Under the pieces are notes generated by a model. The model had not been told where the DNA came from, made no database searches, and saw only the letters and a program-made list of their open reading frames with translations. A stretch of 63,102 nucleotides of DNA, counting the filler, from Octopus bimaculoides (Eukaryota), in assembly GCF_001194135.2 (NCBI RefSeq). It is 5 parts of 5 records of this genome, joined end to end, with 100 filler letters (N's around TTAATTAATTAA, not from the genome) between each part and the next. Parts side by side here need not be neighbours in the genome. Positions count along the whole stretch, not along the records: positions 1 to 28,370 come from NC_068988.1; 4 more parts are not named here. One strand, 5' to 3'. Position numbers and translations under genes: made by a program. Of this stretch, positions 1 to 23,197 are shown in pieces. Position 1 is the first letter of the stretch; each line of letters begins with the position of its first letter.

Positions 1-589
1 GTTGATACTTCTTGTGTAGCATCAATTTCAGTGGGGAGGTGTTATATGGACTGTTAGATATGTAATTCGTCTGACGTTCCGTGTGTCATGTGGTTCGTCT
101 GAGTTCATTGTTTCATTGTTGTTGTCTTGTGGGACTGTCGTAGTAAAAGGTCATTGATAGATATATGGCGGACATGACTTTTGTTAATTCATAACGAACA
201 TTGGGTGAGTGCGTTCTTTGTATGTAATTGAACAATAAATGTAATAATTAAATTGTATAACTCGTTATATTATCTCTGCGAGTCACCCGAGGGAAACATA
301 ACATGAAACATAAAGCAGCTCACTATAGCTTTATTTCAACTCAGAGTGTAGAAGATGGTCACTAAATTTGGTAAGGTATTTTTCTGTAATAATTCTAATC
401 ACCACTACTTTCTTTGTGGTCATTGTTCCATTTGTTGCAAACATTTGAACCAGGCCTCTAGAATGAGGATTTCTGTGAACTGTCCATGTATCATTACTCT
501 CTATATGTCTCCATGATACTGAAAAAATATTTCTAAATCTTCTCAGTCATTTGATAGCTTTTGTCAAACTTTTGAACCCATATGTAACT

Positions 590-1550
590 TCTTACATTCA
601 TGCAATCCATATATCATATTCTCTCTGAAGCTCAAATTTCACAACTCATATTCACTGTTCAGGATATATTCTCTATTGGAACTTCTCTCTTAAAGGTAGT
701 GTCTGTACATACACAGACTCCACTCTTCCTGTCTCTCACTTTTCTCATTTGGATTTCAACAACAATGGCTTCCAGTTGCACTGGTTCACCAGACTCCCTC
801 CGTTTCCAAATGCATTTTCTCCCTCTTTTGCTCTCCAAACTGCCCAAAACTGCCAGCAGTACTTAGGCTATATCTTATCCCATATTGAGAACATTTATTG
901 TAGCACTCTAAGGTCATCATATTGTATGACTTCAACTCTCACAGCTCCTCATGGCTCTCTCACACCTCATCCCACACTGATGTTGTTGGTGCAAAAGCTG
1001 AATCCTTTGCTATTCTCAGCACTTTTTGCACCAACTTGTTTTATCCTCCACTCAGATCTCAGACCATTAAGTAGACATGCCACTTGTCCATGGCAGCAAA
1101 GTGTTTCACTCCTGACCCTTCAAACTGCTCAGAGAGTGACTGAAGCCATTCTTCTAGGCAAGTCCCTTCACTTCTTATGCACAACAATCCCCCAGGTGGT
1201 TTATTCATTGCTGTGTTGCTGCTGTTCAGGCGAAAAACAAGGTTTACAAAATCTGGAGAATCTTACTCACTACCCAAAACTGTATGGAGTTCACCCAGCT
1301 TTGCAGCCCCTGTAAGACCTCTATCCACTTTGCAAAGGATACCTTTGAATTTCATATAACTGTTGAGCTTTCCAACCTCCCAAACTGCAGCCAATCCTTC
1401 TGGTCCCTAATCAAAAGGAGCTTCACCAACTTAGTAGAATCCTTGTTTCTTCCTTTTCTAAACAACAATAGCATCTCCGTAGAGAAAGCCACCTGCTTTG
1501 TTACTCACTTTGTATTTAACTCCACACTTCACACTGTTAATTTTTGAAAA
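590..1550 (+). mobile_element. Decayed CR1/Jockey-type LINE fragment (AP endonuclease and downstream region)
   Basis: Broken frames read HILSEAQIS, VIILYDFNSHSSSWLSHTSSHTDVVG (GDFN-like motif) and SQSFWSLIKR...EKATCFVTHFVFNSTL, which resemble LINE ORF2 segments. Many stops and frameshifts. Confidence 0.6.
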
Positions 1551-1594
1551 TACTGGAGTATTTTGTCAAATAATTGTTAATATTAAGCTGATGT

Positions 1595-1800
1595 AAGGTG
1601 GCAGGCTGGCAGAATCATTAGTATGCCAGGTAAAATGTGTAGTGGCATTTTGTCCACCTTCACAGTCTCTATTCAAGTTCTGCCAAGGTTGATTTGCCTT
1701 TCATCCTTTTAGGGGTCAATAAAATAAGTACCAGCTGAATACTGGGTCGATGTTATCGAAGTTCCCTGAAATTGCCATCCTTGATCCAAAATTTGAAACC
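1595..1800 (+). mobile_element. tRNA-derived SINE, family A (AAGGTGGCAGGCTGGCAGAA head)
   Basis: Homologous to copies at 2520, 30081 and 51758. Near-TSD tattaagct(g/a)atgt on both flanks. Confidence 0.7.
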
Positions 1801-2519
1801 AGTATTAAGCTAATGTTTTTGGACACAAGCTAATGTAAACTTTTAATGAAAAGTTTTCATTTAGATCACTGTGAAACAAGAAGTTTGTATCAGAATCAAT
1901 AGTGATCTCAGGCAGGTTGGTACCAAAAAGTTAAACCAGGTACAATTTGTAAATTTTAAATATTTTATCCAGAAAAATATGCTAAATCTTAGCATGAATT
2001 GATGATGTGCCAAGGTTCAATTTTATTTCATTGTATAAGTCCTCACCTTCTTTAGTAATATTCATAACAATTTTACAATGAAATCACTAAGTAATCCATG
2101 AAAATATGTAAAAAGACTCCTGCTGGATGGAATAATAGAAGAAAATATGAATAACACAAACCTTTGCAAAACTGAAAAATTAGCTTCTGTATGGTTAAAA
2201 TAATCTCGTTTTACAGGACTGTAGGGTTATTTGTAAAACATTTAGTGAAAGGAAATTTGATTGTTATTTCTAACAGCTTTTATGGTGATGTGGAAACCCC
2301 CTTGTTGGGTCCTATGAAACATGTTTTGCTAGCAAAACTAAACAAGCAGAGTTATGGTCCTTGCACATAATTACTGCATTTTGGGTCTTCACTGTGACTG
2401 GTTAGGTAGTGGTGGGAGGTAGCAGTAGGAATGGTGGAAATAACTGTAGTAGTTAGTGGTATGTGGTAGTAGTAAAAGTTAGTGATAGTACTAAGTAATG
2501 GTAATAAAGTAGTAGTGGT

Positions 2520-2705
2520 AAGGTGGCGAGTTGGCAGAAACAGCATGCCAGGCGAAATGCATAGTGGTATTTCGTCTGTCTTTACGTTCTGAGTTCAAAT
2601 TCCACAGGGTCAATAAATTAAGTACCAGTTGCATACTGGATCGATCTAATTGACTCCCCCCCCCCAAAAAAAAAACGGGGACCCTGTGCCTAGAGTAGAA
2701 AAGAA
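2520..2705 (+). mobile_element. SINE family A, internally deleted
   Basis: ggtggcgagttggcagaa...gttcaaattcc...aataaattaagtaccag...gtgcctagagtagaaaag matches the 51758-51968 copy in reverse. Confidence 0.7.
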
Positions 2706-3289
2706 TATAGTAGTTGTGGTGGTTGTGATGCTAGTTAGTGTCTTGTGATATCTTACATTCCAGCACACTGAAGAGAAATAGAAGAGTCCAGAAGTTCTGA
2801 TTTTCTTTGTTTCATTTCCAAGTGTTTTAAAATGTGAATGTTGATGGCTCTTTTTGTCTCGCTCTTCTATTGTTGAATCACTATCAAATTCCTTAAGAAC
2901 TGATAGTGCTAGGAAGCTAGTTAGGGTACCCTCTGTAACTTTTCTTTATTTAATACAGTTTCAGGTAATGGTACTACTGACCTTTCCATATGTTTGCACT
3001 GGTCAGAATTTTGATTTTAAGAGAGTGTCATAGCTGGACGAATGGTTTCCTTGATGCTTCCATACATAGTCCTGATACTCTTACTGGCAAAGATGTGTTC
3101 AATGGAGGAGCTTAACAGCAGCCCAACAGTTGTTGGCACATTTCCTGGTCATTCACTGACAATTAACTTTAGATTTTCTTTGTAAGTTTAAGTCTCTTGA
3201 GTTGGATTTTTCCTGGTTTGTGTTGTGCATTCTGTAACACAGAGATTGGCATCATACTAGTTAGTGCCATCTTTCTGTCTTCCCAAATA

Positions 3290-3700
3290 TTTCAATAGCA
3301 GACCAAAGTTTGATACAACTTTGCCAATGATAAGAGAGTGATCAGAAGCCCAGTTGGTGCTGTGACTGCTCTATGTTCTTATGACAATCACAAAATCCAG
3401 TAGGTGCCAGTGATGTCCTGGATACATTCATGAAACAAACACTATGCTTGTGTTTGTAATGCATGGGTTTTGACTGTTTTCATTCATTTCGTTTTCTCCT
3501 TGGTGGCTGATTCATATACAGGCCCGACATCATATACTGTGCCAACTCCCAGCATATGCAGATCTTCTCATCTCAGAAGCTATTCAATGGGTTCAGCAAC
3601 CTCACTGCAAAAATTGATCTTGATACCTGAGTTATTGTGAGGATAGAGACATTCAATTAGTACCTGTAATAGGTGGTTCTACTATTGATAAGAGAGATAT
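3290..3700 (-). mobile_element. Decayed RTE-like LINE endonuclease fragment
   Basis: Minus strand reads HHWHLLDFVIV...WASDHSLIIGKV (AP endonuclease C-terminal SDH motif) with stops. Confidence 0.5.
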
Positions 3701-4759
3701 CTTTACTACATACACAACATCATACACTTGTCTATAATACTGGTCCCTATCTTTTTCAGAAGGATAGTTTGTCTTATAATAATCCAACAGGTCTCTTGGA
3801 TTATGACTGTGTTCATATTTAATCTTCCAAATTCAGTCTCATTTATAATAAACCATCATTCACAAGTCTTATAATTTGGATTGTGGCTAATTTTACATTT
3901 AGTCTTCCAAGTTCAGCATCAATAACAACTATTTTGTGTCTGTCATTGATTAGTTTCAGATCACTGGACAATAATAGTTCTAACATTTCAGCTTCCTGAA
4001 ATAGCTGGAAACTTATTTGAATTTTTGCATGTAATGTTTGGTACTAGTGTCCAGTTGTCAAACTCAAACACTTGAGGGTCCTTATATCCAAAGAAGCTGC
4101 CAGACCATTTCAGATTTGACATCATTGGCTGGAACTTGCCCATGGAAATAGCATATGGCAACCTACTTTATAACAATTCAGACAGGACTTGTAGTGTGTG
4201 ACTGATGTCTTGCATGTGTTTTTATTCTACAATGATGGAGTACCTTCTCCATGGTGAGAAAAGAAAGAGTGATAGGAAGAAAACAAAAAAGAATCTGAGT
4301 AGATCTTGATGCAGGGGGAAACCAGAACAGAAGAAAATGCAGGTATTATAACTGGTCTACTTTGGTTGCAGAAGTTGTCAGAAAAATTGCCAAGTATCTA
4401 TACTTCTTATGGGGATCCAAGCTGATGTTTCTGTCAAGGTTTGGCTTTATGCTATCTCATAAAGGCTATCTCATAGCCTTTATAACAACCAGCTTTGCTG
4501 AATCCGACAAAATATCACAACATGGAAGTTGATTCGCCTACTCATTAGCTATTTATTTGTAACAATCTCACACATGAGTGTTGTAGTTATTAATAGCAAT
4601 AATCATTGGAAAGATCACCTTATGATATAACTGGTATTTGTATTTGTATGTACTTGAAGTATGAAATACAAAATTTATCATGAACAGATTCGAGATGAAA
4701 ATATTGAAAGGACTAAACTAAATCCTTTAGTTTAATTCTTTCAATATTCAGTAAGACAT

Positions 4760-5100
4760 TTAGAGTGGGCACAACAGACACTCATTATTGTAGGTGATTA
4801 CAATAATGGTGATTATACTAATGATAGTAATTATAGTGATGTTGATGGTAAGTATGGCAGTGGTAGAAATTCTTGTGATAATATCCAAATAAATAATGGC
4901 GACATTGATAAGGATTGTTTTGGTAGTAATTATAATACTGATAAGGGTGTTGTTGGTAGTGTTGATGATGGAAATGTTATGGGAACAGTGATAATTATAA
5001 TGACGGAGATAATGTTGATAATGTGACTTAATGATAGTTGGAATGATGGAGATTATGTTGATAATGTAGATGATAATGTTTATGATAATATTGGTAATAA
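4760..5100. repeat. Degenerate trinucleotide (ATA/ATG/GTA) microsatellite in the last phnX intron
   Basis: 3-nt periodicity. Produces the spurious Ile/Thr-rich ORF 4760-5173. Confidence 0.7.
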
Positions 5101-5133
5101 CCCATATCATTTGGTAATTTCTTTCTTGTACAG

Positions 5134-5633
5134 GAACTGCAGAGACAATGCAAAAACTTCGGAAAGACTTCAATATTAAGATTGGTAGTACGACTGGTTA
5201 TGTACGTTCCATGGTAGATATTGTTTTGGCAGATGTAGCAAAACAAGGTTTCAGACCAGATGTTACAGTGGCTGGTGATGAAGTGATCAATGGATGCCGT
5301 CCCAAACCATTTATGATTTATCGTAATATGGATCTTTTAGATATCCATCCTATTCAATCTGTGATAAAAGTCGATGATACAGCTTCAGGTATTGCTGAAG
5401 CACTGGAGGCTGGTTGTTGGGGTATTGGTGTGAGCAAATACAGTAATTATATGAACATCAACAGTCTTGAACAAGAGGTAGAGCTCACTGAAGAGGCTCT
5501 TGAACAGCGTTTGGAACATTCACGAATTATTCTACGTAACAGTGGGGCACACTATGTTATAGATTCTGTTGCGGATTTACCAAAAGTAGTTGATGATATT
5601 AATAGAAGACTAAGTCAGGGAGAAAAACCTTGA
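5134..5633 (+). CDS. phnX: Terminal coding exon of phosphonoacetaldehyde hydrolase (phosphonatase, HAD family); upstream exons not found in window
   Basis: Acceptor tttctttcttgtacag|GA (phase 1). Frame (G)TAETMQKLRKDFNIKIGSTTGY...GCRPKPFM...KVDDTASGIAEALEAGCWGIGV...GAHYVIDSVADLPKVVDDINRRLSQGEKP* matches the PhnX C-terminal ~60% (HAD motif II STTG, RP motif, motif IV KVDDT, GAHYVID, GE(K/R)P terminus). TGA at 5631-5633; AATAAA at 5886. Confidence 0.92.
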
Positions 5634-8312
5634 CCTCTTATTGGCTTTACTAACTCAAAATGGTTTTGTTTTATGGTTTTTCATTTTATATCATCACCAT
5701 ACTCTTGTTCTGACAAACAGGATAAAAAAGATGATTTGGGTTTGTTTTTTCAAAAAGAATTTGTTTTCCATTTACTCTTTAATGATGAAAAACAAGAATG
5801 AAAGAAATTTAGTTTTGTCTCTTAATCTCAGGAATATGTTTGACTCCAAAGAGTTGGAAGCATTTTTTACAAAAATTGATTTTCGAATAAAATCAAACTT
5901 TATCTTTGTTGTTGAGTATCTCACTTATTTAAACAAAACTAGGTGTGTCTTAATTTAGATAAAACAAGTGTTTGCTCACACTTGTCATTATTCTTGATGG
6001 TGAGTTTTAACAAATTAACAAAAATAAGTAAAATGAAATGTTTAAAAAAAGATTTAATGCTGTGCATGTATGTGTGTGCCTTTTGCTGATGCATATCAGT
6101 AAAGTGTAAAAAAAATAATAGGTGCCTTATAAAGAGTTTCTTAGAGATATTTTTTACTGTATGAACATTCCCTTAGCAGCATTGCTATCATAAATATCAG
6201 TGAACCAGTGACTGGTATGTTAGAAACTTATAACTAACATATTTATCATTCAGTAATTGCTATCTAAAACAAATATATAAATAAATTTACTTGATGATAT
6301 AGGGTTGTCACCACGGCAACAACAATAAAATCTCAATGAGGGCAGTAATGGTAGTTTAGAGATTTACTTTATTTTATTAGCTGTCAGTGATTAAGCTACT
6401 CAAATTGGAATCTGTAGTTGCATGAGGGTGAGAAGGTAAAACCCAAGTTTCACATCAGCAACTAATTAATTGAAGGTACATTAAGCTGGTATGTGCAAAG
6501 CTTTGTTAAACTGGAATAGATAAACAGCAAACGTAATACAAATTAAAACACAAGCCACATTTGTCACCTATATATATGTCATCACATATGTAATACTCTT
6601 GGCTGGTATCAGGGCATACAATGAAACCAATGTGAATAAGGAAACCCTTGCCATTGTCACAGTATCTTTCTAGGAGAGGGACACTGATATAAATTTTGTG
6701 GTTTCACATGATTATTAGCCATTTAACTTCGACCTGCCACTAGGTAATAATCATGGACACTCAGTAAGTGGTACTCAAGTTGTACATGCATTTGCAATCC
6801 AGTGATATACAGATGTCTCTTTATGGTAACCTCATTTGTCATTTTATCTACTGAAAGTCCTATGGTGATAGAAGAGTGGTGGCCTATGCAGACTTAACCA
6901 GTTGGAAGCACACAGTAAATATCAACTTCTGTCTTTCACCTTTGATTCAAACCATGCAGATCTGCAACAGGGTGACAATGAGAAATCATCTGTGAAGATG
7001 GAACAATCACCATGAATGTATATATGTTTATATGTATGTATCCATGCATGCACGTGTGTAGTGAATGAGGGAAGCTTGGTCTGTAATATCTGCAGATGTG
7101 TATGTTTGTCAAGACCTGAGCTCATTTGTCATCAGCAGAGCCACACACATTTGAGTTCATAATGTTCTTAATGGTCAGTGATGGGCTTCTTTGATCACGA
7201 GTGGACAGCCATCATCACATCATCAATGTAACAGCTAGAGTTGGTTTGTTCAAGTGTAGCAAATATTGTTACTACTGCTGTCCAATATTATCATCTGGTT
7301 GGACAACTTTCTAATAAGGTGAAAGATCACTTTTATTATTTGATTGCCATACCATCTCTATGTAAATAATTAATCCATAATTAATCTGCATTGGGACAAC
7401 AATAGTTGACTGATAGGTAATGAGGTGTATTTTGCAGATTCATGGAAAAGAAAAAGAAATATAAGAGGAAATATTTGGAATGGTGACTAAAAGAGTTATT
7501 TGGAAGAAACAGTGGAGCAGTTGATTGAAAGTATCGAAGGATCTTATCGGTTTGGCACAATAATACACTTGCCCAAACTGAATTGCTGGAGTTATTTCAT
7601 TTTTTCCAGAAAAATGTTTTAAAAAAGTTATAGAGGTTTAAAGTTTGATCATTTTCATCCTGTAGCAAGATGAGTAGCAAAGGCTGTTGTTGAGGTAGCA
7701 GATAAAATAGGCATGTGGACGACATCAAAATAAAACTGGGAAAGTATCGGATTGTGGTTTAAATAATTTATTTAATCGACACTTGCATTTACGTGTTGTA
7801 TACACAAGGAAATCCACTACATGACATTACCAACTTGCTTCAAGTTGACAAAGTAAAAAATAAACAGGAGAAATACTGTGTCGATGTGATGAGGTAAAAC
7901 CAGGCATGTTTTGTGTCTGTGTATGCATTGGTCATTCAGTCGTGTCTATGTTCTGCTACTGTGTTTGGTTGTTCATGCTGAATATGTGGTTCTGTGTTGG
8001 CTGCTTGACTGGCGCAAGTTAACTGTTGCCTGTCAACTATTTGTTTGCCTCTTGCAGGCTATCTCTTGTCTCTTGACTGTTTGCCTATTGATGGCTATCT
8101 CTGATTATCTGTCATGTGTGTGGCTGTATTTATAATTGTCATCCCAGCTAGAAGGGCAGACATACCACAGGACTAATTTCTACCTATATAGGTCGCCTCC
8201 TATCCACTTGAACCTTAAATGAAACAGCTCAGGTCAGAGGTCAAAGAGAAATCCATCTATCACCTTTTGACAGGACAAAGAAATTTCTTTCGCGCCTGTT
8301 TGGCCAGTGTCT

Positions 8313-8660
8313 GGAAACTCATGTCTGGAAACCTCGTGACATACTTAGATTATTAAAAAAATTGATAATACAGTCCCTGGAAGGGATCTTTATATCTACC
8401 TCATATAACTATTTTTTTTAAACACCCAAGGGAAATAACCCATAGCATCAGCGTAATATCTTTTTAAACACTCAAGGGAAATAACCCATAGCACCTGCTA
8501 TCAATATTTGATTCTCATGATCAGCGGACCTAATTCTGCATTTCATTACTCAGTTTTCAACTGCTAAACCTTATTATTGCACTTTCTTGATGCATGTACA
8601 CTTTCAATGTCCATAAATCAGATAATCAGACAAGTGAAAATTTTTAGATTCGGTTTCGAA
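8313..8660 (+). repeat. Dispersed repeat copy (same family as 20355-21540)
   Basis: Shares gaaactcatgtctggaaacctcgtgac...aagggaaataacccatagca (twice)...tcagcggacctaattctgcatttcattactca with 20450 and 21140. Confidence 0.8.
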
Positions 8661-9553
8661 TCTTAGCTTGGAAAAAGGAAGTGTTAGTTTTTAACACTAC
8701 TCCCCCCCACCACCTTCTAGTGAGAAAGCCACAGAGATTGAATAATACAGATGTGTATGATATTGAAAATGTGTAATTTTGTGTGTAATGCAGAAAAATG
8801 GATATAGTATCATTTACAAATGAATACATATCAAATATATGTGAAGCAAAAGAAATGTAAAGCAAAATATGTTATGCAATATATGTTAGGCAATGTGTGT
8901 ATGTCTAGGCAGAATCATAAATGTAATATGCTGGCGTGTTGAAAGAGATTGGCAACTCTATTGATCAGTGGCGTGGAGAACAAGTGATAGCACACATGAA
9001 AATATGAATGATGCAAGAGTGTGTAAGCATACAGGTGTGATGTAGAGAGCAAAACAATTTTAAAACAAAGCAAAACATGTGTATGCAAGAAATGTAATTT
9101 TACAGAAAAATGAAAATGTTCATGGAAGAAGTTCATTGGTGAAATGTTCAGCCAGATCAATTAGCAGAACAATGTTCATAAAAATGTTTTTCATTGATAT
9201 AGAAAAATGTTGTTTTTTTTTTAAAACAAAATGTTCTTTGTTTTGTTTTGGTTTTGTTATGTCTCAACACTACTGCTATCTAGCACCTTCGGCTGATCTC
9301 TCCTCAACCGCTACTCAACAATTTCTTTTATTTCCTAATAAATAGGATACATAGAGGGGACGAACTAGGACAGACAAAAAAGGAACATATAGATCGTTGA
9401 GCGTTTTTACAGATGATTTAATGAATGATTTTTATATGAGAATAATATATTATAATATGATGATGTTATTGTTTCAAAAATTTGATTACTTTTAGGTTGA
9501 GGATGTACCTCTAACCCGCCGGTTGATTTTTTGTTTTTCCATTTCTTTTCTTT

Positions 9554-10370
9554 CTATGCCCGGTCCGACCGTGTTGGCATGGCCCCTTGCATACACAACT
9601 TTCTTACGACATCCTTCCATCTTTTTGCAAATACTCTTTGCGACAAGCTCCTCTCCAGACGGATCTTGGAAACAAGATGGGCGGTGAAGTAGTTCACCAG
9701 CCCTCGTCTGGAGATGAGCTGTCCTGTCGCAATTCCTTCCGAACGCGTCCTCCATACCGTTTCTTTCAATATGGTTATTACACAGAAAAATGCTGCCTTC
9801 CTCTCTTTGGAAAAGGAGGAAGGCGGTACCATCTTAATCATGGACTCAGTTGAGAGTCGTACTTCTGCATCTGACATCAGTTGTTCAGCATAGATTATCA
9901 AATCACTCAGCTCCCCACAGTGTACGAAGGTGTGCATCACTGTTTCACTGGCCCGCCCACACCTCGGACATGTGGGGGAGGTGTCACAACCGTGTCTCGA
10001 CAATCTTTCCCGAACCAGTAAGGCCGATCGGTAGCACAGCCAGGCCAAGGATTTTTGGTAATTATCCAGGAGTCCCGACCCGAAGGTCTTCCCGAACAGG
10101 CTGGTTAGCTGCTTCTTGTCGAAGCCCAGAGTCTCCCCCAGGATATCATCAGACTTAAGCTCTACCAACCCACTATAAATATCCGCTGTGGTAACCCTGC
10201 TGCTAGCATTGCTCATTCGAGAGAAGAGGGAGAACGCTTGTTTGCACTCCACCTGCCATTCCCCCGTCTTGGGTCTTCGTCTGATCCATGCTCCTAAGTC
10301 CCTCAGGGACCCATACTTTGGGAAATCCTGCTCGGCAAGCGTTGACCACACCTGCTCACCATCCAGGTGG
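9554..10370 (-). pseudogene. LINE ORF2 C-terminus with CCHC zinc finger
   Basis: LAWLCYRSALLVRERLSRHGCDTSPTCPRCGRASETVMHTFVHC (zf-RVT-like). Confidence 0.85.
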
Positions 10371-10467
10371 CNNNNNNNNNNNNNNNNNNNNNNNNNNNNN
10401 NNNNNNNNNNNNNNNNNNNNNNNNNNNNNNNNNNNNNNNNNNGTTAGGCAGTAGGTTATCACAGATG

Positions 10468-11299
10468 CTATGAACACCTGTGCAACCTCTGCCCTTCCCA
10501 ACAAGGATAACCTCCTCCCAGACCACTCTGGGCTATGGCTGTCACCTTGCTCGCCACCTCACTCCAGTTCTTCTCTACCTGGAGGTCCGGTCCAAACCAG
10601 ACCCCGAGCATTTTAACCGGGCCCTCCGTCCAGCGCCCGTCGACCCCGTTGGGAGGCATCGACTTGCCTCTCCAGGTGCCGAGTTGCAAGCCGACTGATT
10701 TTCCCTGGTTAATTTTCGCCCCTGCTACCGTCTCGTATCCTTTGATGGCGTCCTTTAAGCGAGGTAGACGCCCTTCATCTGACACGATGATGGTGACGTC
10801 ATCCGCGTATGCCGTCACGTTTCTTCCGTTACAAAGATCATGCGGGTCCGCCCCCACGTCCCTCAACTTCCGCAGTAATGGCTCGAGCGCCAACACGTAC
10901 AGAATCGGAGACAGGGGGCAGCCCTGACGAACCGAACGCTTAATCATGAAGGGGTTCGAAAGGAATCCATTCACCCGTTGTCAACCCTATCGAACGCCTT
11001 AGACTGCTCCAAATTCACCAGTGCCCCACCGTTGCCATGCATTTTACCCACCCGCTCTATGGTGTAGCGAATGAGGTGAAGGTTGTCTTGTATCGTCCTT
11101 CCTGGGATGGCGCATGTCTGTGCCTCCCCCACCAGGTCACCCACGACAACCTTAACTCTCTTTCCGAGCACCTTGGCCAAAATCTTTAACTCTGTGTTTA
11201 ACAGAGTTATGGGCCTAAAGTTATTAACGTTATCCCCCTTGCTTGGGTCCTTCCTGACCAGTGTCACCACTCCTCGGCTCACAGCTTTGGGAATCCTCC
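10468..11299 (-). pseudogene. LINE reverse transcriptase domain, frameshifted near 10974
   Basis: NFRPITLLNTELKILAK, LEQSKAFDRV, SVRQGCPLSPILY, AYADDVT motifs. Confidence 0.92.
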
Positions 11300-11692
11300 N
11301 NNNNNNNNNNNNNNNNNNNNNNNNNNNNNNNNNNNNNNNNNNNNNNNNNNNNNNNNNNNNNNNNNNNNNNNNNNNNNNNNNNNNNNNNNNNNNNNNNNNN
11401 NNNNNNNNNNNNNNNNNNNNNNNNNNNNNNNNNNNNNNNNNNNNNNNNNNNNNNNNNNNNNNNNNNNNNNNNNNNNNNNNNNNNNNNNNNNNNNNNNNNN
11501 NNNNNNNNNNNNNNNNNNNNNNNNNNNNNNNNNNNNNNNNNNNNNNNNNNNNNNNNNNNNNNNNNNNNNNNNNNNNNNNNNNNNNNNNNNNNNNNNNNNN
11601 NNNNNNNNNNNNNNNNNNNNNNNNTGTCCGGACTCATCTGTCAAAGACCCGATCGTAGTATCGATGCCACGACGGGTTTCTTCCAAGCGAGC

Positions 11693-12778
11693 CTATCTAG
11701 CAACATTGATAACTTCACGGCCCATTGCACGTGTCCTAGCTCGGACTCTGCACCCTTCGTGTTTGGCATTGAGGTGTCGGTCCAGTGCCGATCTCGCCGC
11801 CAACACTTGTGACGCAGAGCCCGTTCTCAATACCTCGTCTAATGCCTTAACTAAATCCCTTTCTATTCTAGTCTGTTCTAGAATTAACTGTTTGCTAAAT
11901 CTAATTGACTCAAATTGAAGGGCTCTTTTGAGGGCGCTCCACCACCGGTTGTTGATAACAGCGCCGGTAAGTGCCCTCTTCACTAACTCCTTAATCTGGC
12001 TACGGTAAGCCTTGCAATCCAATGAAGTATTGTTCAACTTCCAGTAGCCAGATCTCTGTCTATGTATCTTATCTATAATCACCCTACACGTCACTAACTT
12101 GTGATCTGTGTAGGGTACATATGTAAATTGTAGACAACTGAAACTGTGACTATCTCTAGTGCTTACCATTATCCTGTCTATGTAAGACCTGACCATTCCG
12201 TCACTTCTTGTCCAGGTCCACACTGGCGTGTTCGGGTGGTCAAGCCTGTATCGATCTGCCAGCCTGAAACGCTTCAGCAAATCGATGAGGCAAGAGTTTC
12301 CTTTTCTATCGGTTGAGCTCACGCTATCCAGGCGTGCATCCAGTATAGCGTTGAAGTCACCTAGTACCACTAGTGTCTTTGATGTTACCAGGAAATTCTC
12401 CAGGCGTTGAAAGAAGCCAACCCGTTTGCCTGTATTACTAGGCGCGTAGATGCCCACTAGCCTGAAGGCCTTACCACTGTATTTTACATCCAGAACGACC
12501 AACTTGCCTTCTGGGCCCACGAAGATTGTACTTACCTGCATGACCAAGCTTTTACGGATCAAGACAGCCACCCCTCTGCTCCCTCCCTCTCGGCTAGGAG
12601 AAATTATTTTCTCGTAGCCGTTCAGGAGTGCAGAGAAGGCCTGTAGCTTGTCCAGCTTGGTCTCTGTAACAACCATCACATCTATAACATCTGACCTGAG
12701 GTCGTCGAGGAGGCACGCCTGCTTCCTCTTCGAGTTCAGGCCACGCACATTCAAACAAGCAACATCCAACGCAATCAT
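11693..12778 (-). pseudogene. LINE ORF2 AP endonuclease domain (premature stop at 11693)
   Basis: CLNVRGLN, VTETKL, GIYAPS, VLGDFNAILD, SYIDRIMV, YTDHKLV motifs, followed by SGYWKLNNTSL (L1/Tx1-type linker). Confidence 0.92.
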
Positions 12779-12816
12779 TACGAGTCATAGAAAAAAAGAA
12801 AGTTACTTACCCTCAT

Positions 12817-13790
12817 TTATCTTGTTAGGGGAATGGTTCTCAAAACATTTGAGGCCATTCCCCTACACTCCTCTTTTCGTCTAAGAATGGTTCCACCGGC
12901 GGGAACTATAAACTAGGGAGTCTCGATGGGGTCTAATGACCCCATCTAAATAAATGTTCTTGGCTTTGTAAGCCACTGTTACTAAATCACTGGATTTGAG
13001 GATGTTTATGGGTATGCTTGTGAAGGACATTTTCTTTCTTTTTTCTTTTCTGTGTTAGAGGGCTTGGGTATTTTAGCTCGAACTGTTTTCGGGAAATCAG
13101 TTTTTGTTTTGTCTCTTCCTAGAGCACACTTTATAATCGTCTGTAGTCACAATTTTTTCTTCTTCACTATTCGTAATGTACTCCTCTCTTACGTGTGTTA
13201 CCTCTTGGTGGGGTGAACTCCTGGTAATAGCCTCCTTGGCTGGGAGTTCACCCTCTTTGGTAGGTACGTTTTTTCCTGTAAACTCTGTATCCGGGAGGTG
13301 CACTTTCTTTGGTTTTTCTATTGTTTTCGGGTACATCCTTTTTTGCTTCAGGTTTTTTGGATTCTGTTTGTTTTTTTTGTCCTTTGGGGTATCTTCCTTG
13401 GAGGTGGAGGGAACAGGGGTAGGTTGGTCTGCTTTGTTGTTTTCGGGGAACTTCTCTTTTATGTGGCCCTTCTTGCCGCACTTGTAGCACCTTGGTTTTC
13501 TCCCTTCGACATGAATAGGGATGTTCATGTCATCCATTACAATAGTTTCAGGTAAATCCTCAAGGTCGATGCTTGTGGTTTGGGCCAGAATATCCAGGGT
13601 CTGACCTCGCCAATTTTGTGGACCGTCTCGTGTTATTTGGATATCTTGATTTTCTCTCTCTTGCAGAGGAGGGTGGCCAAAATCCACCCTACCTCTGCTT
13701 CAGGGGGGATGTTTTTAATTTTAATCCTGGATGTACAATATTCCTTCCCCCGAAGGGGGAGGATCACAGTTCTCAGTACAAATAAAATAA
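12817..13790 (-). pseudogene. ORF1b: N-truncated, frameshifted gag-like ORF with zinc knuckle
   Basis: CTSRIKIKNIPPEAEVGWIL...IPIHVEGRKPRCYKCGKKGHIKEKFP aligns with ORF1a VARVRVGKVPPELEEAWLM...LRVKVEGRLPICFACGEKGHMKARCP. Broken reading continues to TAA at 12819-12817. Confidence 0.7.
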
Positions 13791-13870
13791 TAACAAAGTC
13801 ACCCTTACGGGAACAAGCAAACACAATTTACAACAATAACAACAGCAAGCAAAGCCTCTTCTTTCTTCTT

Positions 13871-14743
13871 TTACTGGTTCTTTGGTGGCGAGTTCGTTCT
13901 TCCACTTCTCCTTCGTTTTCTTTTCACTACCGTGAATCCCTCCTCCGTTGTATTTTCTTCCATCTCTGCCTGTACTACCTGGTTCGTGTTCTCCTGCTTT
14001 TCTGTCGGTTCTCTCTGTGGGCATCTCGCCTTCATGTGGCCTTTCTCGCCACATGCAAAACATATAGGCAGCCTGCCCTCCACTTTCACTCTTAATCTTA
14101 GGTCGCCGGGCAGCACTATCTCCTCTTCGATTCTATTTAAGTCTTCCACTGTTGCCTGGATAGTGAGTTTAATTCCATATCCCCAGTAATCCAAACTTTG
14201 TGTTCTTGCGGCCTTCAGTATCTTGGCCTCATCCTTCATGTTGAACATTATTGCTGTCATCAGCCATGCTTCTTCTAGCTCTGGGGGTACTTTGCCTACT
14301 CGCACTCTGGCCACACGTTTGCCACAGTACGACGGCAACAGCACCCATTCCTCCGATCGTATAGCCTCCGTGGAGTTCTTAATTGCTTCTACTTCTGTTG
14401 CAAAGCGTACCTCCACGGTGGCATACTTTCTTCCTCTTGTTACAAATGTTGTTTGCTTCCTGATACTTTTCAGGCATTCCTCAATCTCCTCCACTGTCGC
14501 GCGCTCTATCTTTCTAGTTGCTATTTTCATGGTTTTAAATACCACAGTTCTCTTTCTTACTCCGCTTATCAGTTCCACAGGTGGTGTCAACTTCAGCGTG
14601 TCTCCGACTTTCGCCAGCAACTTCTCACATTCTTTTATTTTCTTCGGCTCCACTTTAATTTCAATTATTTCTAGTTTTCCTTCCTCTGTTCCTCTTTCGG
14701 TTGCGGCCGCATAACTCTGGCCACCCACCGGCGCTTTCTCCAT
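13871..14743 (-). CDS. ORF1a: intact gag-like nucleic-acid-binding protein (~290 aa) with CCHC knuckle
   Basis: Open frame from MEKAPVGGQSYAAA to CFACGEKGHMKARC and a basic tail EGFTVVKRKRRR. Confidence 0.8.
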   Translation of the reverse strand: MEKAPVGGQSYAAATERGTEEGKLEIIEIKVEPKKIKECEKLLAKVGDTLKLTPPVELISGVRKRTVVFKTMKIATRKIERATVEEIEECLKSIRKQTTFVTRGRKYATVEVRFATEVEAIKNSTEAIRSEEWVLLPSYCGKRVARVRVGKVPPELEEAWLMTAIMFNMKDEAKILKAARTQSLDYWGYGIKLTIQATVEDLNRIEEEIVLPGDLRLRVKVEGRLPICFACGEKGHMKARCPQREPTEKQENTNQVVQAEMEENTTEEGFTVVKRKRRRSGRTNSPPKNQ

Positions 14744-15189
14744 TTTCCACAATGGGAAGATATAAAAACAGTGAACAATATCAACAATTAACAGCAATAA
14801 GTAACACTCAATTTTTCAACAAAAATATTCAACGTTGCAACTCACATTAAAAACTCTCCGTCATCGNNNNNNNNNNNNNNNNNNNNNNNNNNNNNNNNNN
14901 NNNNNNNNNNNNNNNNNNNNNNNNNNNNNNNNNNNNNNNNNNNNNNNNNNNNNNNNNNNNNNNNNNNNNNNNNNNNNNNNNNNNNNNNNNNNNNNNNNNN
15001 NNNNNNNNNNNNNNNNNNNNNNNNNNNNNNNNNNNNNNNNNNNNNNNNNNNNNNNNNNNNNNNNNNNNNNNNNNNNNNNNNNNNNNNTTTTATTTGTTGA
15101 TGTGGACTTTGTAGACATTTCAATTGAGATGACGAGTAAGTGAAGAATTTGTACTTACTCGAAAGACTTGAACAAATCTTGCGGGCCAT

Positions 15190-17075
15190 CGAACTGTTCT
15201 TCCCAATTTAGTGTGCAGAATCTGAGGTGTTTGCGGTGGATAAAGCTGAAGTTGTTGAGTCCGTTTGAGGAACGGCGGGAACTGAAAGTAAGTCCTCTCC
15301 GACAAATGCTTTTTCTAAGCGATCGACAGAGACAGTATTTCGTTTTCCTCCAATATCAAGAACGAAATACTTTGGTTCTTTTTGGATTACTTTGTAGGAC
15401 CCAGAATATGGTGGCCAAAGTTGAGAAGGTATTCCATCATTTCTAACAAAAACATTCATCCGAGTATTGATGTCCTTTGGGACATGTGAAGCGACATTCT
15501 GTTGTCTGGGGCCTGCAGGGGGAAAATGCGACATAGATGTCAGTGAGCAGGGGACATATTTTGCTGGGTCCAGAAAGTCTTGTGGTGAAACAGGGTCGAT
15601 CATCTGCCCAGGTAAGGCGAGTGCTGTACCATAGACCAGTTCAGCCGAAGTATTACGGAAGGACTTGGTGCTTTTTTACTGTATTCTATGACCCATCGTA
15701 ACATTCCTATTTAGATTATAACCGTGGATCGAATACCAAGGAGGATGAGAAGATATTCCAACCAGTTGGAGCAGTCTGGATATGCTTTTGTAGCTGCCTT
15801 GAGTTGGCATGCCATTTGCTGCATGGTGATATGCTGTTGTGCGGGTGTGTTTACACCCGAAAAAACTAGTCAGCTCAGTGAAAAGGGGAGAATTAAACTG
15901 ATGTCCTCTGTCGGTGGTGATCGTCACGGGTGTGCTGAAACGTGAAACCCAGTGAAACACTAGCGTTTTGGTGACAGTTTCCGCAGAAGTGTCCGATAGG
16001 GGAAAAGCTTCCAGCCAGCGAGAAAATCTGTCAACACAGGTGATCGGGTGAATGCAGTTGTTGAAAGGAGGCAAAGGTCCAATGATGCCAATATGCACGT
16101 GTTGGAAACATGCATCTGGAGTTGCAAAGTAACCGATGGGAGATTTAATGTGTCGGCGGACCTTTGCTTTTTGGCACGTGACGCAGGTCCTAGCCCAATC
16201 ATGGGTGTCTTTGTTGATGTTGAGCCACACAAAACAGGTCGGTATCAGTTTTTGTGTGGTGCGGACTCCATGAAGTGCTAGGGAATGCAAAGCAGAGAAA
16301 ACGCCACCGCTATGTTTCTACGACATGTATGGATGTTCATGACCGGTGAAGGTATCACCAAATATAACCTGAAGCAGAGGGTATCAGTGATTGCTGAAAT
16401 TTCAGAGATGACGAATTCCGGAGCTGTAATAGCTCTTCGTCATCTTGTTAATTAGTTGCAATCTGCTAGAGATCAAAGTTCCGTGTGTACAGAGCTGTTT
16501 GCACCCTTGATGTGACAAATGTTTGTTGTGTACTGTGATATGAAGTCTAGTTGTCGGACTTCCCTGGGTGAGTGACGATCAGGCTTGGCGTTGAAGGCAT
16601 AAACCAGCAGTTTATGGTCGGTATAAATGGAGAAAACGCGATCTTCCAGCATGTGTCGAAAATGCTTGACAGCGAAACACACTGCCAGTAATTCACTACC
16701 GAAGGTATTGTACTTAGTCTCGGCGGGTTTTACGCACTTGGAGAAGAAGGATACCAAATACCGCCAGTGAGCTGTTGGAGCACACCTCCAACTACAGAAT
16801 CAGATGCATCAACTAGTACACACAGGGGGGCGTCAGGCTTGGGATACTCCAGTATGGTAGCGTTGGATAACGCTTTTTTCAAGTTAGCGAAAGAGGCAAG
16901 TTGTTCACTCAGGGCAATGTTTTTATTTTTGCTTGTTCACAAAAAAGTGGGGTAAAAATCTGTGCTAGAAATTCACCGAGCCAAGAGATTCTCGCAATTT
17001 GCGGAGAGATGTGGGTGGTGGAAAATCCACGACGGCTTTGACTTTCTTCGATGAAAGTGCTCCAGTAATTTTCTT
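15190..17075 (-). mobile_element. Decayed Ty3/Gypsy pol (RT thumb, RNase H, integrase)
   Basis: KVKAVVDFPPPTSLRKLR; LVDASDSVVGGVLQQ; ETKYNTFGSELLA...YTDHKLL; HHCC-like H...WARTCVTCQKAK; HVHIGIIGPLP...CVDRFSRWLEAFPL; PPYSGSYKVI...VSVDRLEKA. Order RT-RH-IN. Confidence 0.9.
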
Positions 17076-20354: not shown

Positions 20355-21540
20355 TATCTACTACATATGTGGAAAATCGATGTGTGTTTGTTTGTGGTGT
20401 TGTTAGCTAACTCCTCCTACATTGATTTTGATAAAACTTGACTCGTGAGTAGAACTCATGTCTGGAAACCTCGTGACTTAGATTGTTGAAAAGATCGATA
20501 ATACAGTCCCTGGAAGGAATCTTTATATCTACCTCATATAACTAATTTTTTTTAAACACCAAAGGGAAATGACCCATAGCATCTGCACAATATCTTTTTA
20601 AATATTCAAGGGAAATAACCCATAGCACCTGCATTTACAGTTGTTAGTTTTTAGCGAAGCGATCAATATTTGATTCTCACAATCAGCGGACCTAATTCTG
20701 CATTTCATTACTCACAGTTTTTGCACTTTCTTGATGCATGTACATTTTCAATGCCCATAAATCCGATAATTTTGCATTCTTCCAGTTAAAAGTTTTCGAT
20801 GACACTACATAAATTTTTGATTCCAGAACGTATTTAATAAGTGTGTCCCAATACAATGAACTAATACTTTGAATGCTTAAACTTCTTAGAAAATGAAACC
20901 AAACTTCCACACCACATTCAGTTGGTACATTCTGTATCACATACTTATTTTACAAATCATAATATTTATTGCTTATTGTTCATACAACATTTTCATGAAA
21001 CTAATTGAGCCATCGAATTTAGAAATATTTTACAGGTTTCATTGTTTATGTTCGATTACTTTGAATATAGATTTTTTGTGTGTCCAATTTCCAATTTTTG
21101 CAGACAATATCACTTCTAAACTTTATTTGATACGTGAGTGGAACTCATGCCTGGAAACCTCGTGACATACTTAGATTGTTTTAAAAAATCGATAATAGGG
21201 CCCCTCCAATGGATCCTTCTATCTACTACATATTTCTAATATTTAAACAACCCAAGGGAAATAACCCATACCACCTACAGTTTTAGCGGATCAATATTTG
21301 ATTCCTACGATCAGCCGACCTCATTATGCATTTCACTACTCAGTTTTGAACTGCTAAACATTATTATTACATTTCGTTGATTTAAATCTTGAACCTTAAA
21401 GAGTTCATTCATACATTTCTATACATACATACGTTTTTGAATGCCCATTACTCCGATAATTCTGCATTTTTACAGTTACACTTTTTCCATGATAGTAGAT
21501 AATTTTTTTTATTCCACAACGTATTTGTAGCAGCTTCATG
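20355..21540 (+). mobile_element. Tandemly duplicated non-autonomous repeat with Helitron-like 5' end
   Basis: Starts TCTACTACATA...gtgtgtttgtttgt...gattttgataaaact. A ~690-bp unit recurs at 20445 and 21135. No clear 3' CTRR or hairpin found. Confidence 0.4.
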
Positions 21541-21890: not shown

Positions 21891-22404
21891 TTTCATTCTT
21901 AAATATTAAACAATTCATTCATATACTTATATGTATATATACTACATTTATATATTACCTTTGATAAATTAGCCTTCGTAAAGTTCACCTTTAAAATGCC
22001 ACGACGAGTCTGAGTACTTTCTCGCCAACCTCCGAAAACCTCTCTCGCCAACCTCCAACAATCTCTCCCTCCTCCAGCTGACAATTTTTTGTACTTTTTT
22101 GCGACGGAAAATACACCTTTTGTGGCAGTTATAACAAAATTGCTTTCTTACATCAGAGTTATAAGGCATTTCAATAGAACATCTTTACCCCCAGTATAGA
22201 TATATCTATATCTATATATATATATATATATATATAATATCAATNNNNNNNNNNNNNNNNNNNNNNNNNNNNNNNNNNNNNNNNNNNNNNNNNNNNNNNN
22301 NNNNNNNNNNNNNNNNNNNNNNNNNNNNNNNNNNNNNNNNNNNNNNNNNNNNNNNNNNNNNNNNNNNNNNNNNNNNNNNNNNNNNNNNNNNNNNNNNNNN
22401 NNNN

Positions 22405-23045
22405 AGAGAGTATTCTTTTATTCGTTTACTTTTTTCAGTCATTTGACTGCGACCATACTGGAGCACCGCCTTGAAGGGTTTTAGCCAAATAAATCAACCC
22501 CAGGACTTATTTTCTTTTAAAGCCTAGTACTTATTCTATCGGTCACTTTTGCTGAACCGCTAAGTTACGAGGACGTAAGCACACCAACACTAGTTGTTAA
22601 GCTGTGATTGTTGGGTGGGGGACAGACACAAAAGCTCACACACATAGACACACACAAACACACAAACACATACACACACACGCGACGGATTTCCGTCTAC
22701 CAAATCCACTGATAAAGCTTTGGTCAGCCCAAGGCTATAGTAGAAGACACCTGCCTAAAATGCCATGAAGTGGGACTGAACCCAAAACCATGTGGTTGGG
22801 AATCAGGTGTGACTATGTGGTAAGAAGCTTTCTTCCCAACCACATGGTTTCGGGTTCAGTCCCACTTCATGGCACTTTGACCAAAGCCTAGTGACTGGAT
22901 CTAGTAGACGGAAGCAAATAAACCCGTCGTATATATGTATGTTTGTGTGTGTGTGTGTGTGAGTCTTTGTGTCTCTCCTCCACCCAACGATCAGAGCTTG
23001 ACAACTAGTGTTGGTGTGCTTACGTCCCCGTAACTTAGTGGTTAT
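22405..23045. mobile_element. Two family-B SINEs joined head-to-head (22405-22803 minus; 22805-23045 plus)
   Basis: Inverted heads gtgggactgaacccaaaaccatgtggttgggaa / ttcccaaccacatggtttcgggttcagtcccac; central (CA)n; tail tcttttattcgtttac...gtcatttgactgcgacc. Confidence 0.75.
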
Positions 23046-23197
23046 ATATATATATATATATATATACAGATATAGGGCAGAGAATCGTCAATTAGTAATA
23101 AAATTAATAATTAACAATTTTGCCAAGTAGTTCAGTATGAAAAAACCTTTATCGGTAAAATCATTTATAATCATAAATATACAGGGATTAGCATGAG

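What the first reader, a model, noticed from the sequence alone, without database searches (positions are those of the whole stretch)
5134..5633. Intron-containing animal phosphonatase (PhnX): host-encoded C-P bond cleavage
Seen: a spliced terminal exon encoding the PhnX C-terminal ~165 aa with intact STTG, RP and KVDDT motifs, in AT-rich host sequence among SINEs and microsatellites, so bacterial contamination is unlikely. Established: PhnX hydrolyses phosphonoacetaldehyde downstream of the 2-AEP transaminase PhnW and is characterised mainly in bacteria; molluscs carry abundant 2-aminoethylphosphonate lipids such as CAEP. Inference: this animal can recycle its own phosphonates. The N-terminal DWAGT and Schiff-base Lys exons are not visible in 1-5133, so the last intron probably exceeds 5.1 kb. 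Whether the gene is stand-alone or fused to a PhnW domain cannot be seen here.
Basis: partly seen in the sequence, partly recalled or inferred. Interest (0 to 1): 0.75.

Follow-up and report, generated by a model that had tools for sequence, protein, structure and literature searches.

The report
Octopus phosphonatase gene, last exon
This is the last exon of the California two-spot octopus's own phosphonoacetaldehyde hydrolase (PhnX) gene, a real host gene for breaking carbon-phosphorus bonds, but one already annotated in public databases and already reported in other animals.

Summary
Window 5134-5633 (+) is a spliced terminal coding exon (AG acceptor, phase 1, 165 codons plus TGA) encoding the C-terminal core of phosphonoacetaldehyde hydrolase.

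The window is 100% identical to the Octopus bimaculoides chromosome assembly. The exon is 165/165 identical to RefSeq XP_052826159.1 / XP_014779081.1, "phosphonoacetaldehyde hydrolase".

The missing N-terminal exon (DWSGT nucleophile, Schiff-base Lys) lies 10,576 nt upstream, outside the window, across a canonical GT-AG intron. The protein is stand-alone (280 aa), not fused to PhnW.

- A 1.3-kb contig with uninterrupted CDS from a related octopod joins the two exons at exactly this junction.
- dN/dS is 0.14-0.22, indicating purifying selection.
- All catalytic motifs are kept. Motif IV is the "DD...G" form rather than the "GD...D" form of the characterised Bacillus enzyme.

Orthologues are annotated across molluscs and a brachiopod. 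They are about 65% identical to marine bacterial PhnX genes that sit next to a gene annotated PhnW, a LysR regulator and, in one locus, an ABC transporter. Intron positions differ between animal classes, and abalone and chiton copies are intronless, which fits an old bacterial acquisition. The tree does not resolve this.

Animal PhnX has already been reported in rotifers, corals and a snail proteome. The finding is real but not new, and enzyme activity remains untested.

The parts
1..5133 (+). 3' 5.1 kb of the last intron of the PhnX gene. The whole intron is 10,576 nt, and its 5' 5.4 kb lies upstream of the window. Pyrimidine tract and AG acceptor at about 5120-5133.
   Evidence: Window 1 corresponds to L002 43626 at 100% identity. 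The donor g|GTAAGT is at L002 38183. The acceptor sequence was read. No PhnX-coding match in 1-5133. Relative to O. sinensis, about 3.3 kb (605-3908) is extra sequence.
5134..5633 (+). Coding part of the terminal exon. Two bases complete Gly115, followed by 165 codons (aa 116-280) and TGA at 5631-5633. It encodes the C-terminal part of the HAD (haloacid dehalogenase-superfamily) core domain of phosphonoacetaldehyde hydrolase.
   Evidence: 165/165 identical to O. bimaculoides XP_052826159.1. Joining it to the upstream exon reproduces the 280-aa RefSeq protein exactly.
5187..5201 (+). HAD motif II, S-T-T-G-Y. It corresponds to B. cereus Ser124-Tyr128, including Thr126 and Tyr128.
   Evidence: Residue-by-residue alignment to 1RQL/2IOF. 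Conserved in all relatives surveyed.
5298..5300 (+). Arg codon (cgt) corresponding to B. cereus PhnX Arg160. PhnX has Arg at HAD motif III where other HAD enzymes have Lys.
   Evidence: Alignment. 'RP' is nearly invariant.
5367..5390 (+). HAD motif IV, K-V-D-D-T-A-S-G. The second Asp corresponds to B. cereus Asp186. Asp190 is replaced by Gly, and Gly185 is replaced by Asp (the 'DD' form of motif IV).
   Evidence: Alignment. The DD...G and GD...D forms covary across the family.
5634..5915 (+). 3' untranslated region of the terminal exon, with AATAAA at 5886-5891. The end is approximate.
   Evidence: Transcript-like contig L006 from a related octopod aligns to the window up to 5915. The hexamer was read.

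Best explanation
Window 5134-5633 is the last coding exon of the nuclear phosphonoacetaldehyde hydrolase (PhnX, EC 3.11.1.1) gene of Octopus bimaculoides. The gene has two coding exons.

The upstream exon lies outside the window. It encodes the Asp nucleophile (DWSGT) and the cap domain with the Schiff-base Lys (PMGLRKDAH). The exon seen here supplies the rest of the HAD core: motif II (Thr/Tyr), motif III (Arg) and the Mg-binding acidic motif IV.

By homology with the Bacillus cereus enzyme (established knowledge, not tested here), the Lys forms an imine with phosphonoacetaldehyde. The Asp then attacks phosphorus, breaking the C-P bond and forming an aspartyl-phosphate. Hydrolysis releases acetaldehyde and phosphate.

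In the animal it most likely acts downstream of an aminoethylphosphonate transaminase, releasing phosphate from 2-aminoethylphosphonate (AEP). The AEP could come from the octopus's own ceramide aminoethylphosphonate (CAEP) lipids or from phosphonolipid-rich prey.

Shown here: gene identity, gene structure, host location, splicing in a relative, purifying selection and conserved catalytic residues. Inferred: substrate, activity and physiological role.
For: Family identity:
- TIGR01422 matches the exon at 4.7e-48.
- The full-length O. sinensis orthologue (156/165 identical to the window's exon) scores 299 bits against a curated cut-off of 220, versus 73 bits for the PhnX-like sister model.
- The full-length O. 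bimaculoides protein aligns end to end with B. cereus PhnX residues 6-261. Asp12, Met49, Lys53, His56, Thr126, Tyr128, Arg160 and Asp186 are all matched.

Host gene:
- 100% identity to the chromosome assembly.
- Canonical GT-AG phase-1 intron of 10,576 nt.
- Orthologous two-exon locus in O. sinensis.
- Retrotransposons in the flank.

Expression and constraint:
- A 1,329-nt contig from run SRR3401912 carries an uninterrupted 280-aa CDS. It aligns to both exons with the junction at window 5134.
- dN/dS is 0.215 against O. sinensis and 0.142 against that transcript.
- The gene is annotated as phosphonoacetaldehyde hydrolase in three Octopus species.

Function of the clade:
- Bacterial relatives about 65% identical, with the same motifs, lie directly after an Aminotran_5 gene.
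- In both loci examined a LysR regulator lies beside them. An ABC transporter is present in one (L003).
- That Aminotran_5 gene is named 2-aminoethylphosphonate--pyruvate transaminase by NCBI and JGI.

Substrate supply: CAEP and N-methyl-CAEP are reported in Octopus vulgaris muscle (PMC12335516).
Against: - No animal PhnX has been assayed, as far as the searched library shows.
- Motif IV differs from the characterised B. cereus enzyme: Asp190 is Gly, with a compensating Asp at position 185. Cys22 is Val.
- The closest solved structure, 3IRU, is deposited only as 'phosphonoacetaldehyde hydrolase like protein'.
- A partner transaminase in the octopus genome was not demonstrated. The search returned only bacterial proteins.
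- The transcript evidence comes from a related species, not from O. bimaculoides itself.
Confidence: 0.88

Rival explanations
1. It is a HAD hydrolase of the PhnX lineage that has drifted to another substrate, such as a sugar phosphate or another phosphonate. On this reading the name 'phosphonatase' is an annotation carried over by homology.
For: - Motif IV is the DD...G form, not the GD...D form of the assayed enzymes.
- Cys22 of the B. cereus active site is Val.
- The nearest structure is labelled only 'like protein'.
- In an animal genome there is no operon context to anchor the function.
Against: - The Schiff-base Lys, His56, Met49, Tyr128 and Arg160, which distinguish PhnX from phosphatase-type HADs, are all kept.
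- The orthologue passes the curated equivalog cut-off by about 80 bits.
- Bacterial proteins with the same DD...G motif set sit immediately after the gene annotated PhnW.
Confidence: 0.07
2. It is bacterial contamination or a mis-assembled bacterial fragment in the octopus assembly.
For: About 65% identity to marine proteobacterial PhnX, as high as the identity to other molluscs.
Against: - The coding sequence is split by a 10.6-kb GT-AG intron.
- The locus has GC of 0.30-0.37, animal retrotransposons and microsatellites.
- The same two-exon locus, with alignable intron and flank, exists in O. sinensis.
- The intron position recurs in a third, more distant relative.
Confidence: 0.01
3. It is a decaying relic (pseudogene) of an old transfer, no longer used.
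For: Only half of the gene is visible in the window. No expression data from this species were available.
Against: - The joined exons give an intact 280-aa frame.
- dN/dS is 0.14-0.22.
- A spliced transcript exists in a related octopod.
- A snail orthologue was detected as protein in haemocytes (PMC6281880).
Confidence: 0.02

Closest known systems
RefSeq XP_052826159.1 / XP_014779081.1, phosphonoacetaldehyde hydrolase [Octopus bimaculoides]
   Same: This is the same gene. The exon translation is 165/165 identical, and the window is 100% identical to that assembly.
   Different: Nothing differs. The window holds only the terminal exon and part of the last intron.
Bacillus cereus phosphonoacetaldehyde hydrolase PhnX (PDB 1FEZ, 1RQL, 2IOF), the mechanistically characterised enzyme
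   Same: - Same length class, with end-to-end alignment.
- The Asp nucleophile, Schiff-base Lys53, His56, Met49, Thr126, Tyr128, Arg160 and Asp186 are all conserved.
   Different: - phmmer E-values are about 1e-55 for the full length and about 1e-26 for the exon.
- Motif I is DWSGT versus DWAGT.
- Cys22 is Val.
- Motif IV is DDTxSG versus GDTVSD.
- It is encoded by a spliced animal gene rather than a phnWX operon.
Oleispira antarctica 'phosphonoacetaldehyde hydrolase like protein' (PDB 3IRU)
   Same: - Best PDB match (2.5e-58 for the full length).
- Shares the KVDDT...G motif IV and the C-terminal ...RRLxxGEKP tail.
   Different: - It is bacterial.
- Its motif I is DWAGT.
- It was deposited without a demonstrated activity in the entry name.
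Marine bacterial PhnX clade (Rhodospirillales, Gammaproteobacteria and Phycisphaeraceae MAGs, i.e. metagenome-assembled genomes), encoded in operons
   Same: About 63-68% identity to the exon, with identical motif set (DWSGT, PMGLRKDLH, RPKP, KVDDTxSG).
   Different: These genes are intronless and sit directly after the gene annotated PhnW. A LysR regulator is present in both loci examined, and an ABC transporter in one.
Animal PhnX reported as horizontally acquired genes in bdelloid rotifers and corals
   Same: Host-encoded, expressed PhnX in an invertebrate, proposed to give access to AEP phosphorus (PMC3499245; PMC4878875; bioRxiv 10.64898/2026.05.06.723128).
   Different: According to the preprint, the coral copies group with Symbiodiniaceae and apart from other Metazoa. 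The mollusc/brachiopod copies here group with a marine bacterial clade.

Membership tests
Phosphonoacetaldehyde hydrolase PhnX (NCBIfam TIGR01422, equivalog) | Whole-protein score above the curated cut-off (220 bits) and above sister HAD models. | tested here: met
   - The O. sinensis orthologue (156/165 identical to the window's exon) scores 299.1 bits, against 73.3 for TIGR03351 PhnX-like.
- The exon alone scores 163.7 bits over profile positions 104-251. That is below the cut-off only because it is about 60% of the protein.
- The O. bimaculoides protein itself was not scanned against NCBIfam.
Phosphonoacetaldehyde hydrolase PhnX (NCBIfam TIGR01422, equivalog) | HAD motif I with the Asp nucleophile (B. 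cereus Asp12, DxxGT). | tested here: met
   DWSGT lies in the upstream exon (L002 37840-38182), outside the window. It aligns to B. cereus D12-T16.
Phosphonoacetaldehyde hydrolase PhnX (NCBIfam TIGR01422, equivalog) | Cap-domain Schiff-base Lys (Lys53) with Met49 and His56, the feature that separates PhnX from phosphatase HADs. | tested here: met
   PMGLRKDAH aligns to B. cereus PMGLLKIDH. It is encoded in the upstream exon, not in the window.
Phosphonoacetaldehyde hydrolase PhnX (NCBIfam TIGR01422, equivalog) | Motif II Thr126/Tyr128 and motif III Arg160. | tested here: met
   STTGY at window 5187-5201 and Arg at 5298-5300.
Phosphonoacetaldehyde hydrolase PhnX (NCBIfam TIGR01422, equivalog) | Motif IV acidic residues (B. 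cereus Asp186 and Asp190, GDxxxD). | tested here: inconclusive
   - Asp186 is present.
- Asp190 is Gly, and position 185 is Asp (KVDDTASG, 5367-5390).
- The two forms covary across 82 family members.
- 'DD' is a recognised alternative HAD motif IV signature (own knowledge), so this is probably equivalent. It has not been shown for PhnX.
Phosphonoacetaldehyde hydrolase PhnX (NCBIfam TIGR01422, equivalog) | Works with an AEP-pyruvate transaminase (PhnW) that supplies phosphonoacetaldehyde. | not testable with these tools
   - The partnership is met for the closest bacterial relatives.
- No tool searches the octopus genome.
- The protein search seeded with the bacterial PhnW listed only bacterial or unnamed metagenomic hits, with no animal protein among the named ones.
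Phosphonoacetaldehyde hydrolase PhnX (NCBIfam TIGR01422, equivalog) | Hydrolysis of phosphonoacetaldehyde to acetaldehyde and phosphate. | not testable with these tools
   This needs an enzyme assay.
HAD superfamily (Pfam PF13419 / PF00702) | Match to the HAD Rossmannoid core models. | tested here: met
   - The exon alone gives only HAD_2 at 17.1 bits, below the 23.8 cut-off.
- The full-length orthologue carries precomputed PF13419 and PF00702 hits.

The most novel reading that the evidence does not exclude
The mollusc/brachiopod PhnX genes descend from one old transfer of a marine bacterial phnX gene into an early lophotrochozoan. They arrived intronless and gained introns independently in each class: cephalopods at codon 115, a bivalve and a brachiopod elsewhere, abalone and chiton still intronless. 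They were kept under selection because these animals build large amounts of phosphonolipid and need their own way to recover the phosphorus. Other animal lineages (corals, rotifers, a hemichordate) would have acquired PhnX separately.
Probability: 0.5. Interest if true: 0.45.

Novelty: already known. Interest (0 to 1): 0.25.

Why it matters
C-P bond cleavage is usually treated as a microbial trait. [quoted passage not shown]

A host-encoded, selected PhnX in animals rich in phosphonolipids would mean they can turn over their own or dietary 2-aminoethylphosphonate without microbes. That bears on phosphorus budgets of marine invertebrates.

However, the gene is already annotated in this species and many molluscs. 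The idea has also been published for rotifers and corals. What remains open is biochemical proof in any animal, and a proper phylogeny for the mollusc clade.

Tried and rejected
- **N-terminal exon in the window.** I looked on both strands with tblastn, using four full-length PhnX queries at word size 2. Only chance hits with E > 0.06 appeared. The exon was then located in the species' own chromosome record.
- **Intron length from O. sinensis.** My first estimate, that the upstream exon lay about 1.2 kb beyond the window start, was wrong. O. bimaculoides has extra intronic insertions.
- **Exact-sequence lookup of the 280-aa isoform** found nothing. The 306-aa isoform worked.
- **Octopus PhnW.** I seeded a protein search with the bacterial PhnW adjacent to a close PhnX relative. 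All 120 listed hits were bacterial or unnamed metagenomic sequences at 76% identity or more, with no animal protein among the named ones. The search says nothing about octopus.
- **Phylogeny.** Neighbour-joining with 200 bootstraps does not resolve whether the animals are monophyletic (2-12% support). It gives only 66% support for animals plus the bacterial clade together. The bacterial clade alone gets 95%. The direction and number of transfers are therefore not settled.
- **SINE claim.** ARAGORN and Rfam found nothing in the window. The interspersed repeats are real but unclassified.
- **Rejected readings.** Contamination, pseudogene and PhnW fusion (see the rival explanations).

Full report
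**1. What is in the sequence**

Positions 5120-5133 read tctttcttgtacag, a pyrimidine tract ending in an AG acceptor. The exon begins at 5134. Its first two bases, 'ga', finish a split codon. From 5136 the frame runs for 165 codons (TAETMQKLRKDF...RRLSQGEKP) to TGA at 5631-5633.

- The peptide matches the NCBIfam equivalog model for phosphonoacetaldehyde hydrolase, TIGR01422. E = 4.7e-48, 163.7 bits, over profile positions 104-251 of 251.
- The next model, PhnX-like TIGR03351, scores 59 bits.
- Pfam sees only a weak HAD_2 match, as expected for half a domain.
- In the PDB the best matches are Oleispira 3IRU and the Bacillus cereus PhnX structures (E about 1e-26 to 1e-28).

**2. Whose gene it is**

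The best database hit is RefSeq [quoted passage not shown], at 95% identity. Its 90% cluster also holds the O. bimaculoides and O. vulgaris proteins. The exon translation is 165/165 identical to O. bimaculoides XP_052826159.1 / XP_014779081.1.

The window itself aligns at 100% identity to chromosome record CM046608.1 of assembly GCA_001194135.2. Window position 1 corresponds to locus L002 position 43626. The window's N runs break the alignment into blocks (N runs listed). The window is therefore O. bimaculoides, and the gene is already annotated.

**3. Gene structure**

tblastn finds no N-terminal PhnX coding sequence anywhere in the window. In the species' own record the upstream coding exon is at L002 37840-38182: ATG ... 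cca g, followed by GTAAGT.

The intron runs from L002 38183 to 48758. It is 10,576 nt, GT-AG, phase 1. The window holds its last 5,133 nt.

Joining the two exons in a script gives exactly the 280-aa RefSeq protein. Isoform X1 (306 aa) uses an alternative first coding exon about 28 kb further upstream. The protein is stand-alone. PhnW-PhnX fusions of about 640 aa do exist in bacteria, but this is not one.

O. sinensis has the same two-exon structure with an intron of about 3.1 kb. The octopus in hand carries extra intronic sequence, including about 3.3 kb at window 605-3908.

**4. Is it used?**

A 1,329-nt contig assembled from run SRR3401912 carries an uninterrupted 280-aa CDS, 87% identical in this exon's 165 aa. 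It aligns to both genomic exons, with the junction exactly at window 5134. It continues through the stop into the 3' UTR as far as window 5915. That is about 24 nt after an AATAAA at 5886-5891.

This is a spliced mRNA in a related octopod. It is not direct evidence for this species.

Nei-Gojobori dN/dS is 0.215 against O. sinensis and 0.142 against that transcript, which indicates purifying selection. A snail orthologue has been detected as protein in Biomphalaria haemocytes (PMC6281880).

**5. Catalytic equipment**

The full-length O. bimaculoides protein aligns with B. cereus PhnX residues 6-261. Counting along that alignment gives the following.

| B. cereus residue | Octopus equivalent |
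|---|---|
| Asp12 | Asp20 (DWSGT; Ala14 is Ser) |
| Met49, Lys53, His56 | conserved (PMGLRKDAH) |
| Thr126, Tyr128 | conserved |
| Arg160 | conserved |
| Asp186 | conserved |
| Cys22 | Val |
| Gly185 / Asp190 | Asp / Gly |

The last row means motif IV reads DDTxSG instead of GDTxxD. Across 82 family members these two forms covary cleanly. 'DD' is a recognised alternative HAD motif IV (own knowledge). I therefore regard it as an equivalent arrangement, but this is untested for PhnX.

The O. sinensis orthologue passes the curated TIGR01422 cut-off, 299 versus 220 bits.

**6. Function of the clade**

Bacterial proteins about 65% identical, with the same motif set, lie immediately downstream of a class-V aminotransferase gene in both loci examined.

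- A divergent LysR regulator lies next to them in both loci.
- A four-gene ABC transporter cluster is present in one locus, L003.
- NCBI and JGI name that aminotransferase 2-aminoethylphosphonate--pyruvate transaminase.

This resembles the classical phnR/phnWX/transporter layout (own knowledge). It supports phosphonoacetaldehyde as the substrate for the DD-type clade.

Octopus muscle contains ceramide aminoethylphosphonate and its N-methyl form (PMC12335516), so a source of AEP exists. I could not establish whether the octopus encodes the transaminase.

**7. Mechanism (inferred from the B. cereus enzyme)**

- The cap-domain Lys forms a Schiff base with phosphonoacetaldehyde.
- The motif I Asp attacks phosphorus.
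- The C-P bond breaks, giving an enamine and an aspartyl-phosphate.
- Both are hydrolysed to acetaldehyde and phosphate.
- The exon in the window supplies the phosphate- and Mg-binding half of the core (motifs II-IV). The nucleophile and the Lys are encoded in the exon outside the window.

**8. Origin**

Orthologues are annotated in gastropods, bivalves, a chiton and the brachiopod Lingula. A more distant copy (51% identity) is annotated in the hemichordate Glandiceps.

In neighbour-joining trees:
- The marine bacterial clade is monophyletic (95% bootstrap).
- That clade groups with the mollusc/brachiopod sequences at 66%.
- Animal monophyly is not recovered.
- The hemichordate falls elsewhere.

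Intron positions are not shared between classes.

| Lineage | Coding intron positions (codon) |
|---|---|
| Cephalopods, including a 71%-identical relative (L010) | 115 |
| Mercenaria (bivalve) | about 47, 90, 129, 162 |
| Lingula (brachiopod) | about 65, 121, 153, 193, 230 |
| Haliotis (abalone) | none |
| Liolophura (chiton) | none |

This pattern fits an intronless acquired gene that gained introns lineage by lineage. The tree is too weak to call the direction or the number of transfers.

**9. What is already known**

- Bdelloid rotifer transcripts for PhnX and AEP transaminase were reported as foreign genes in 2012 (PMC3499245).
- PhnX is in a coral HGT table from 2016 (PMC4878875).
- A 2026 preprint presents coral PhnX/PhnW as horizontally acquired and expressed, with a tree that includes "other Metazoa".
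- No paper in the searched library deals specifically with mollusc or cephalopod PhnX.
- I found no assay of any animal enzyme.

**10. Verdict**

The open points are now settled: the intron is 10.6 kb, the protein is stand-alone, and motif I is DWSGT.

The finding is an ordinary, already annotated gene of a kind already described in animals. Residual interest lies in the untested biochemistry, the DD-type motif IV and the probable bacterial origin with class-specific intron gain.

Noticed in passing
window 9254-15088, minus strand (ORFs 9554-10504, 10468-10974, 11693-12778, 13097-13687, 13871-14797): A non-LTR retrotransposon (LINE) lies downstream of the gene. It has an endonuclease/exonuclease/phosphatase domain, a reverse transcriptase, zf-RVT and two CCHC zinc-knuckle ORF1-like frames. 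Three assembly gaps interrupt it. O. sinensis lacks it at the orthologous site: window 8625-9254 and 15088-16322 align to adjacent O. sinensis sequence.
   Followed up: partly
window 15208-16757, minus strand: A fragment of an LTR-retrotransposon pol gene. It has an integrase zinc-binding and core domain at 15676-16290. An ORF at 16473-16757 looked RNase H-like by eye. About 79% of the sequence is alignable with O. sinensis, so the insertion is older and shared.
   Followed up: partly
window 605-3908: About 3.3 kb of intronic sequence is absent from the O. sinensis intron. It includes a 188-aa ORF (749-1315) with no Pfam match. Window 40-268 also recurs at 99% identity 4.7 kb further upstream in the same intron (L002 38902-39130).
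   Followed up: no
window 22411-23043; also 8343-8591, 20476-20753, 21170-21381: Unclassified interspersed repeats. The first family has at least six copies in the 34-kb O. sinensis locus. The second is an element of about 250 nt present three times in the window.
   Followed up: partly
window 23187-23340 and 23961-24114: A 154-nt inverted repeat, 95% complementary, flanks the 489-nt assembly gap at 23341-23829. It could be a foldback element or an assembly artefact around the gap.
   Followed up: no
window 10372-10442, 11300-11624, 14867-15087, 22245-22404, 23341-23829: Runs of N (assembly gaps) inside the piece. ORFs listed across them are artefacts.
   Followed up: yes
L007 1001-1843 (Haliotis cracherodii), L012 501-1346 (Liolophura sinensis): The PhnX coding sequence is intronless in an abalone and a chiton, on multi-megabase scaffolds. 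Octopus, Mercenaria and Lingula have 1, 4 and 5 coding introns, all at different positions.
   Followed up: partly
PhnX family alignment; window 5367-5390: Motif IV occurs in two mutually exclusive forms across the family: K-V-D-D-T-x-x-G and K-V-G-D-T-x-x-D. It looks as if the second acidic residue had moved from position 190 to position 185. All animal sequences examined have the DD form.
   Followed up: partly
L003 15915-16757: The bacterial contig carrying a close PhnX relative has a second 280-aa HAD hydrolase gene 7 kb away, beside two Aminotran_3 genes. It may be a second phosphonate-related module.
   Followed up: no
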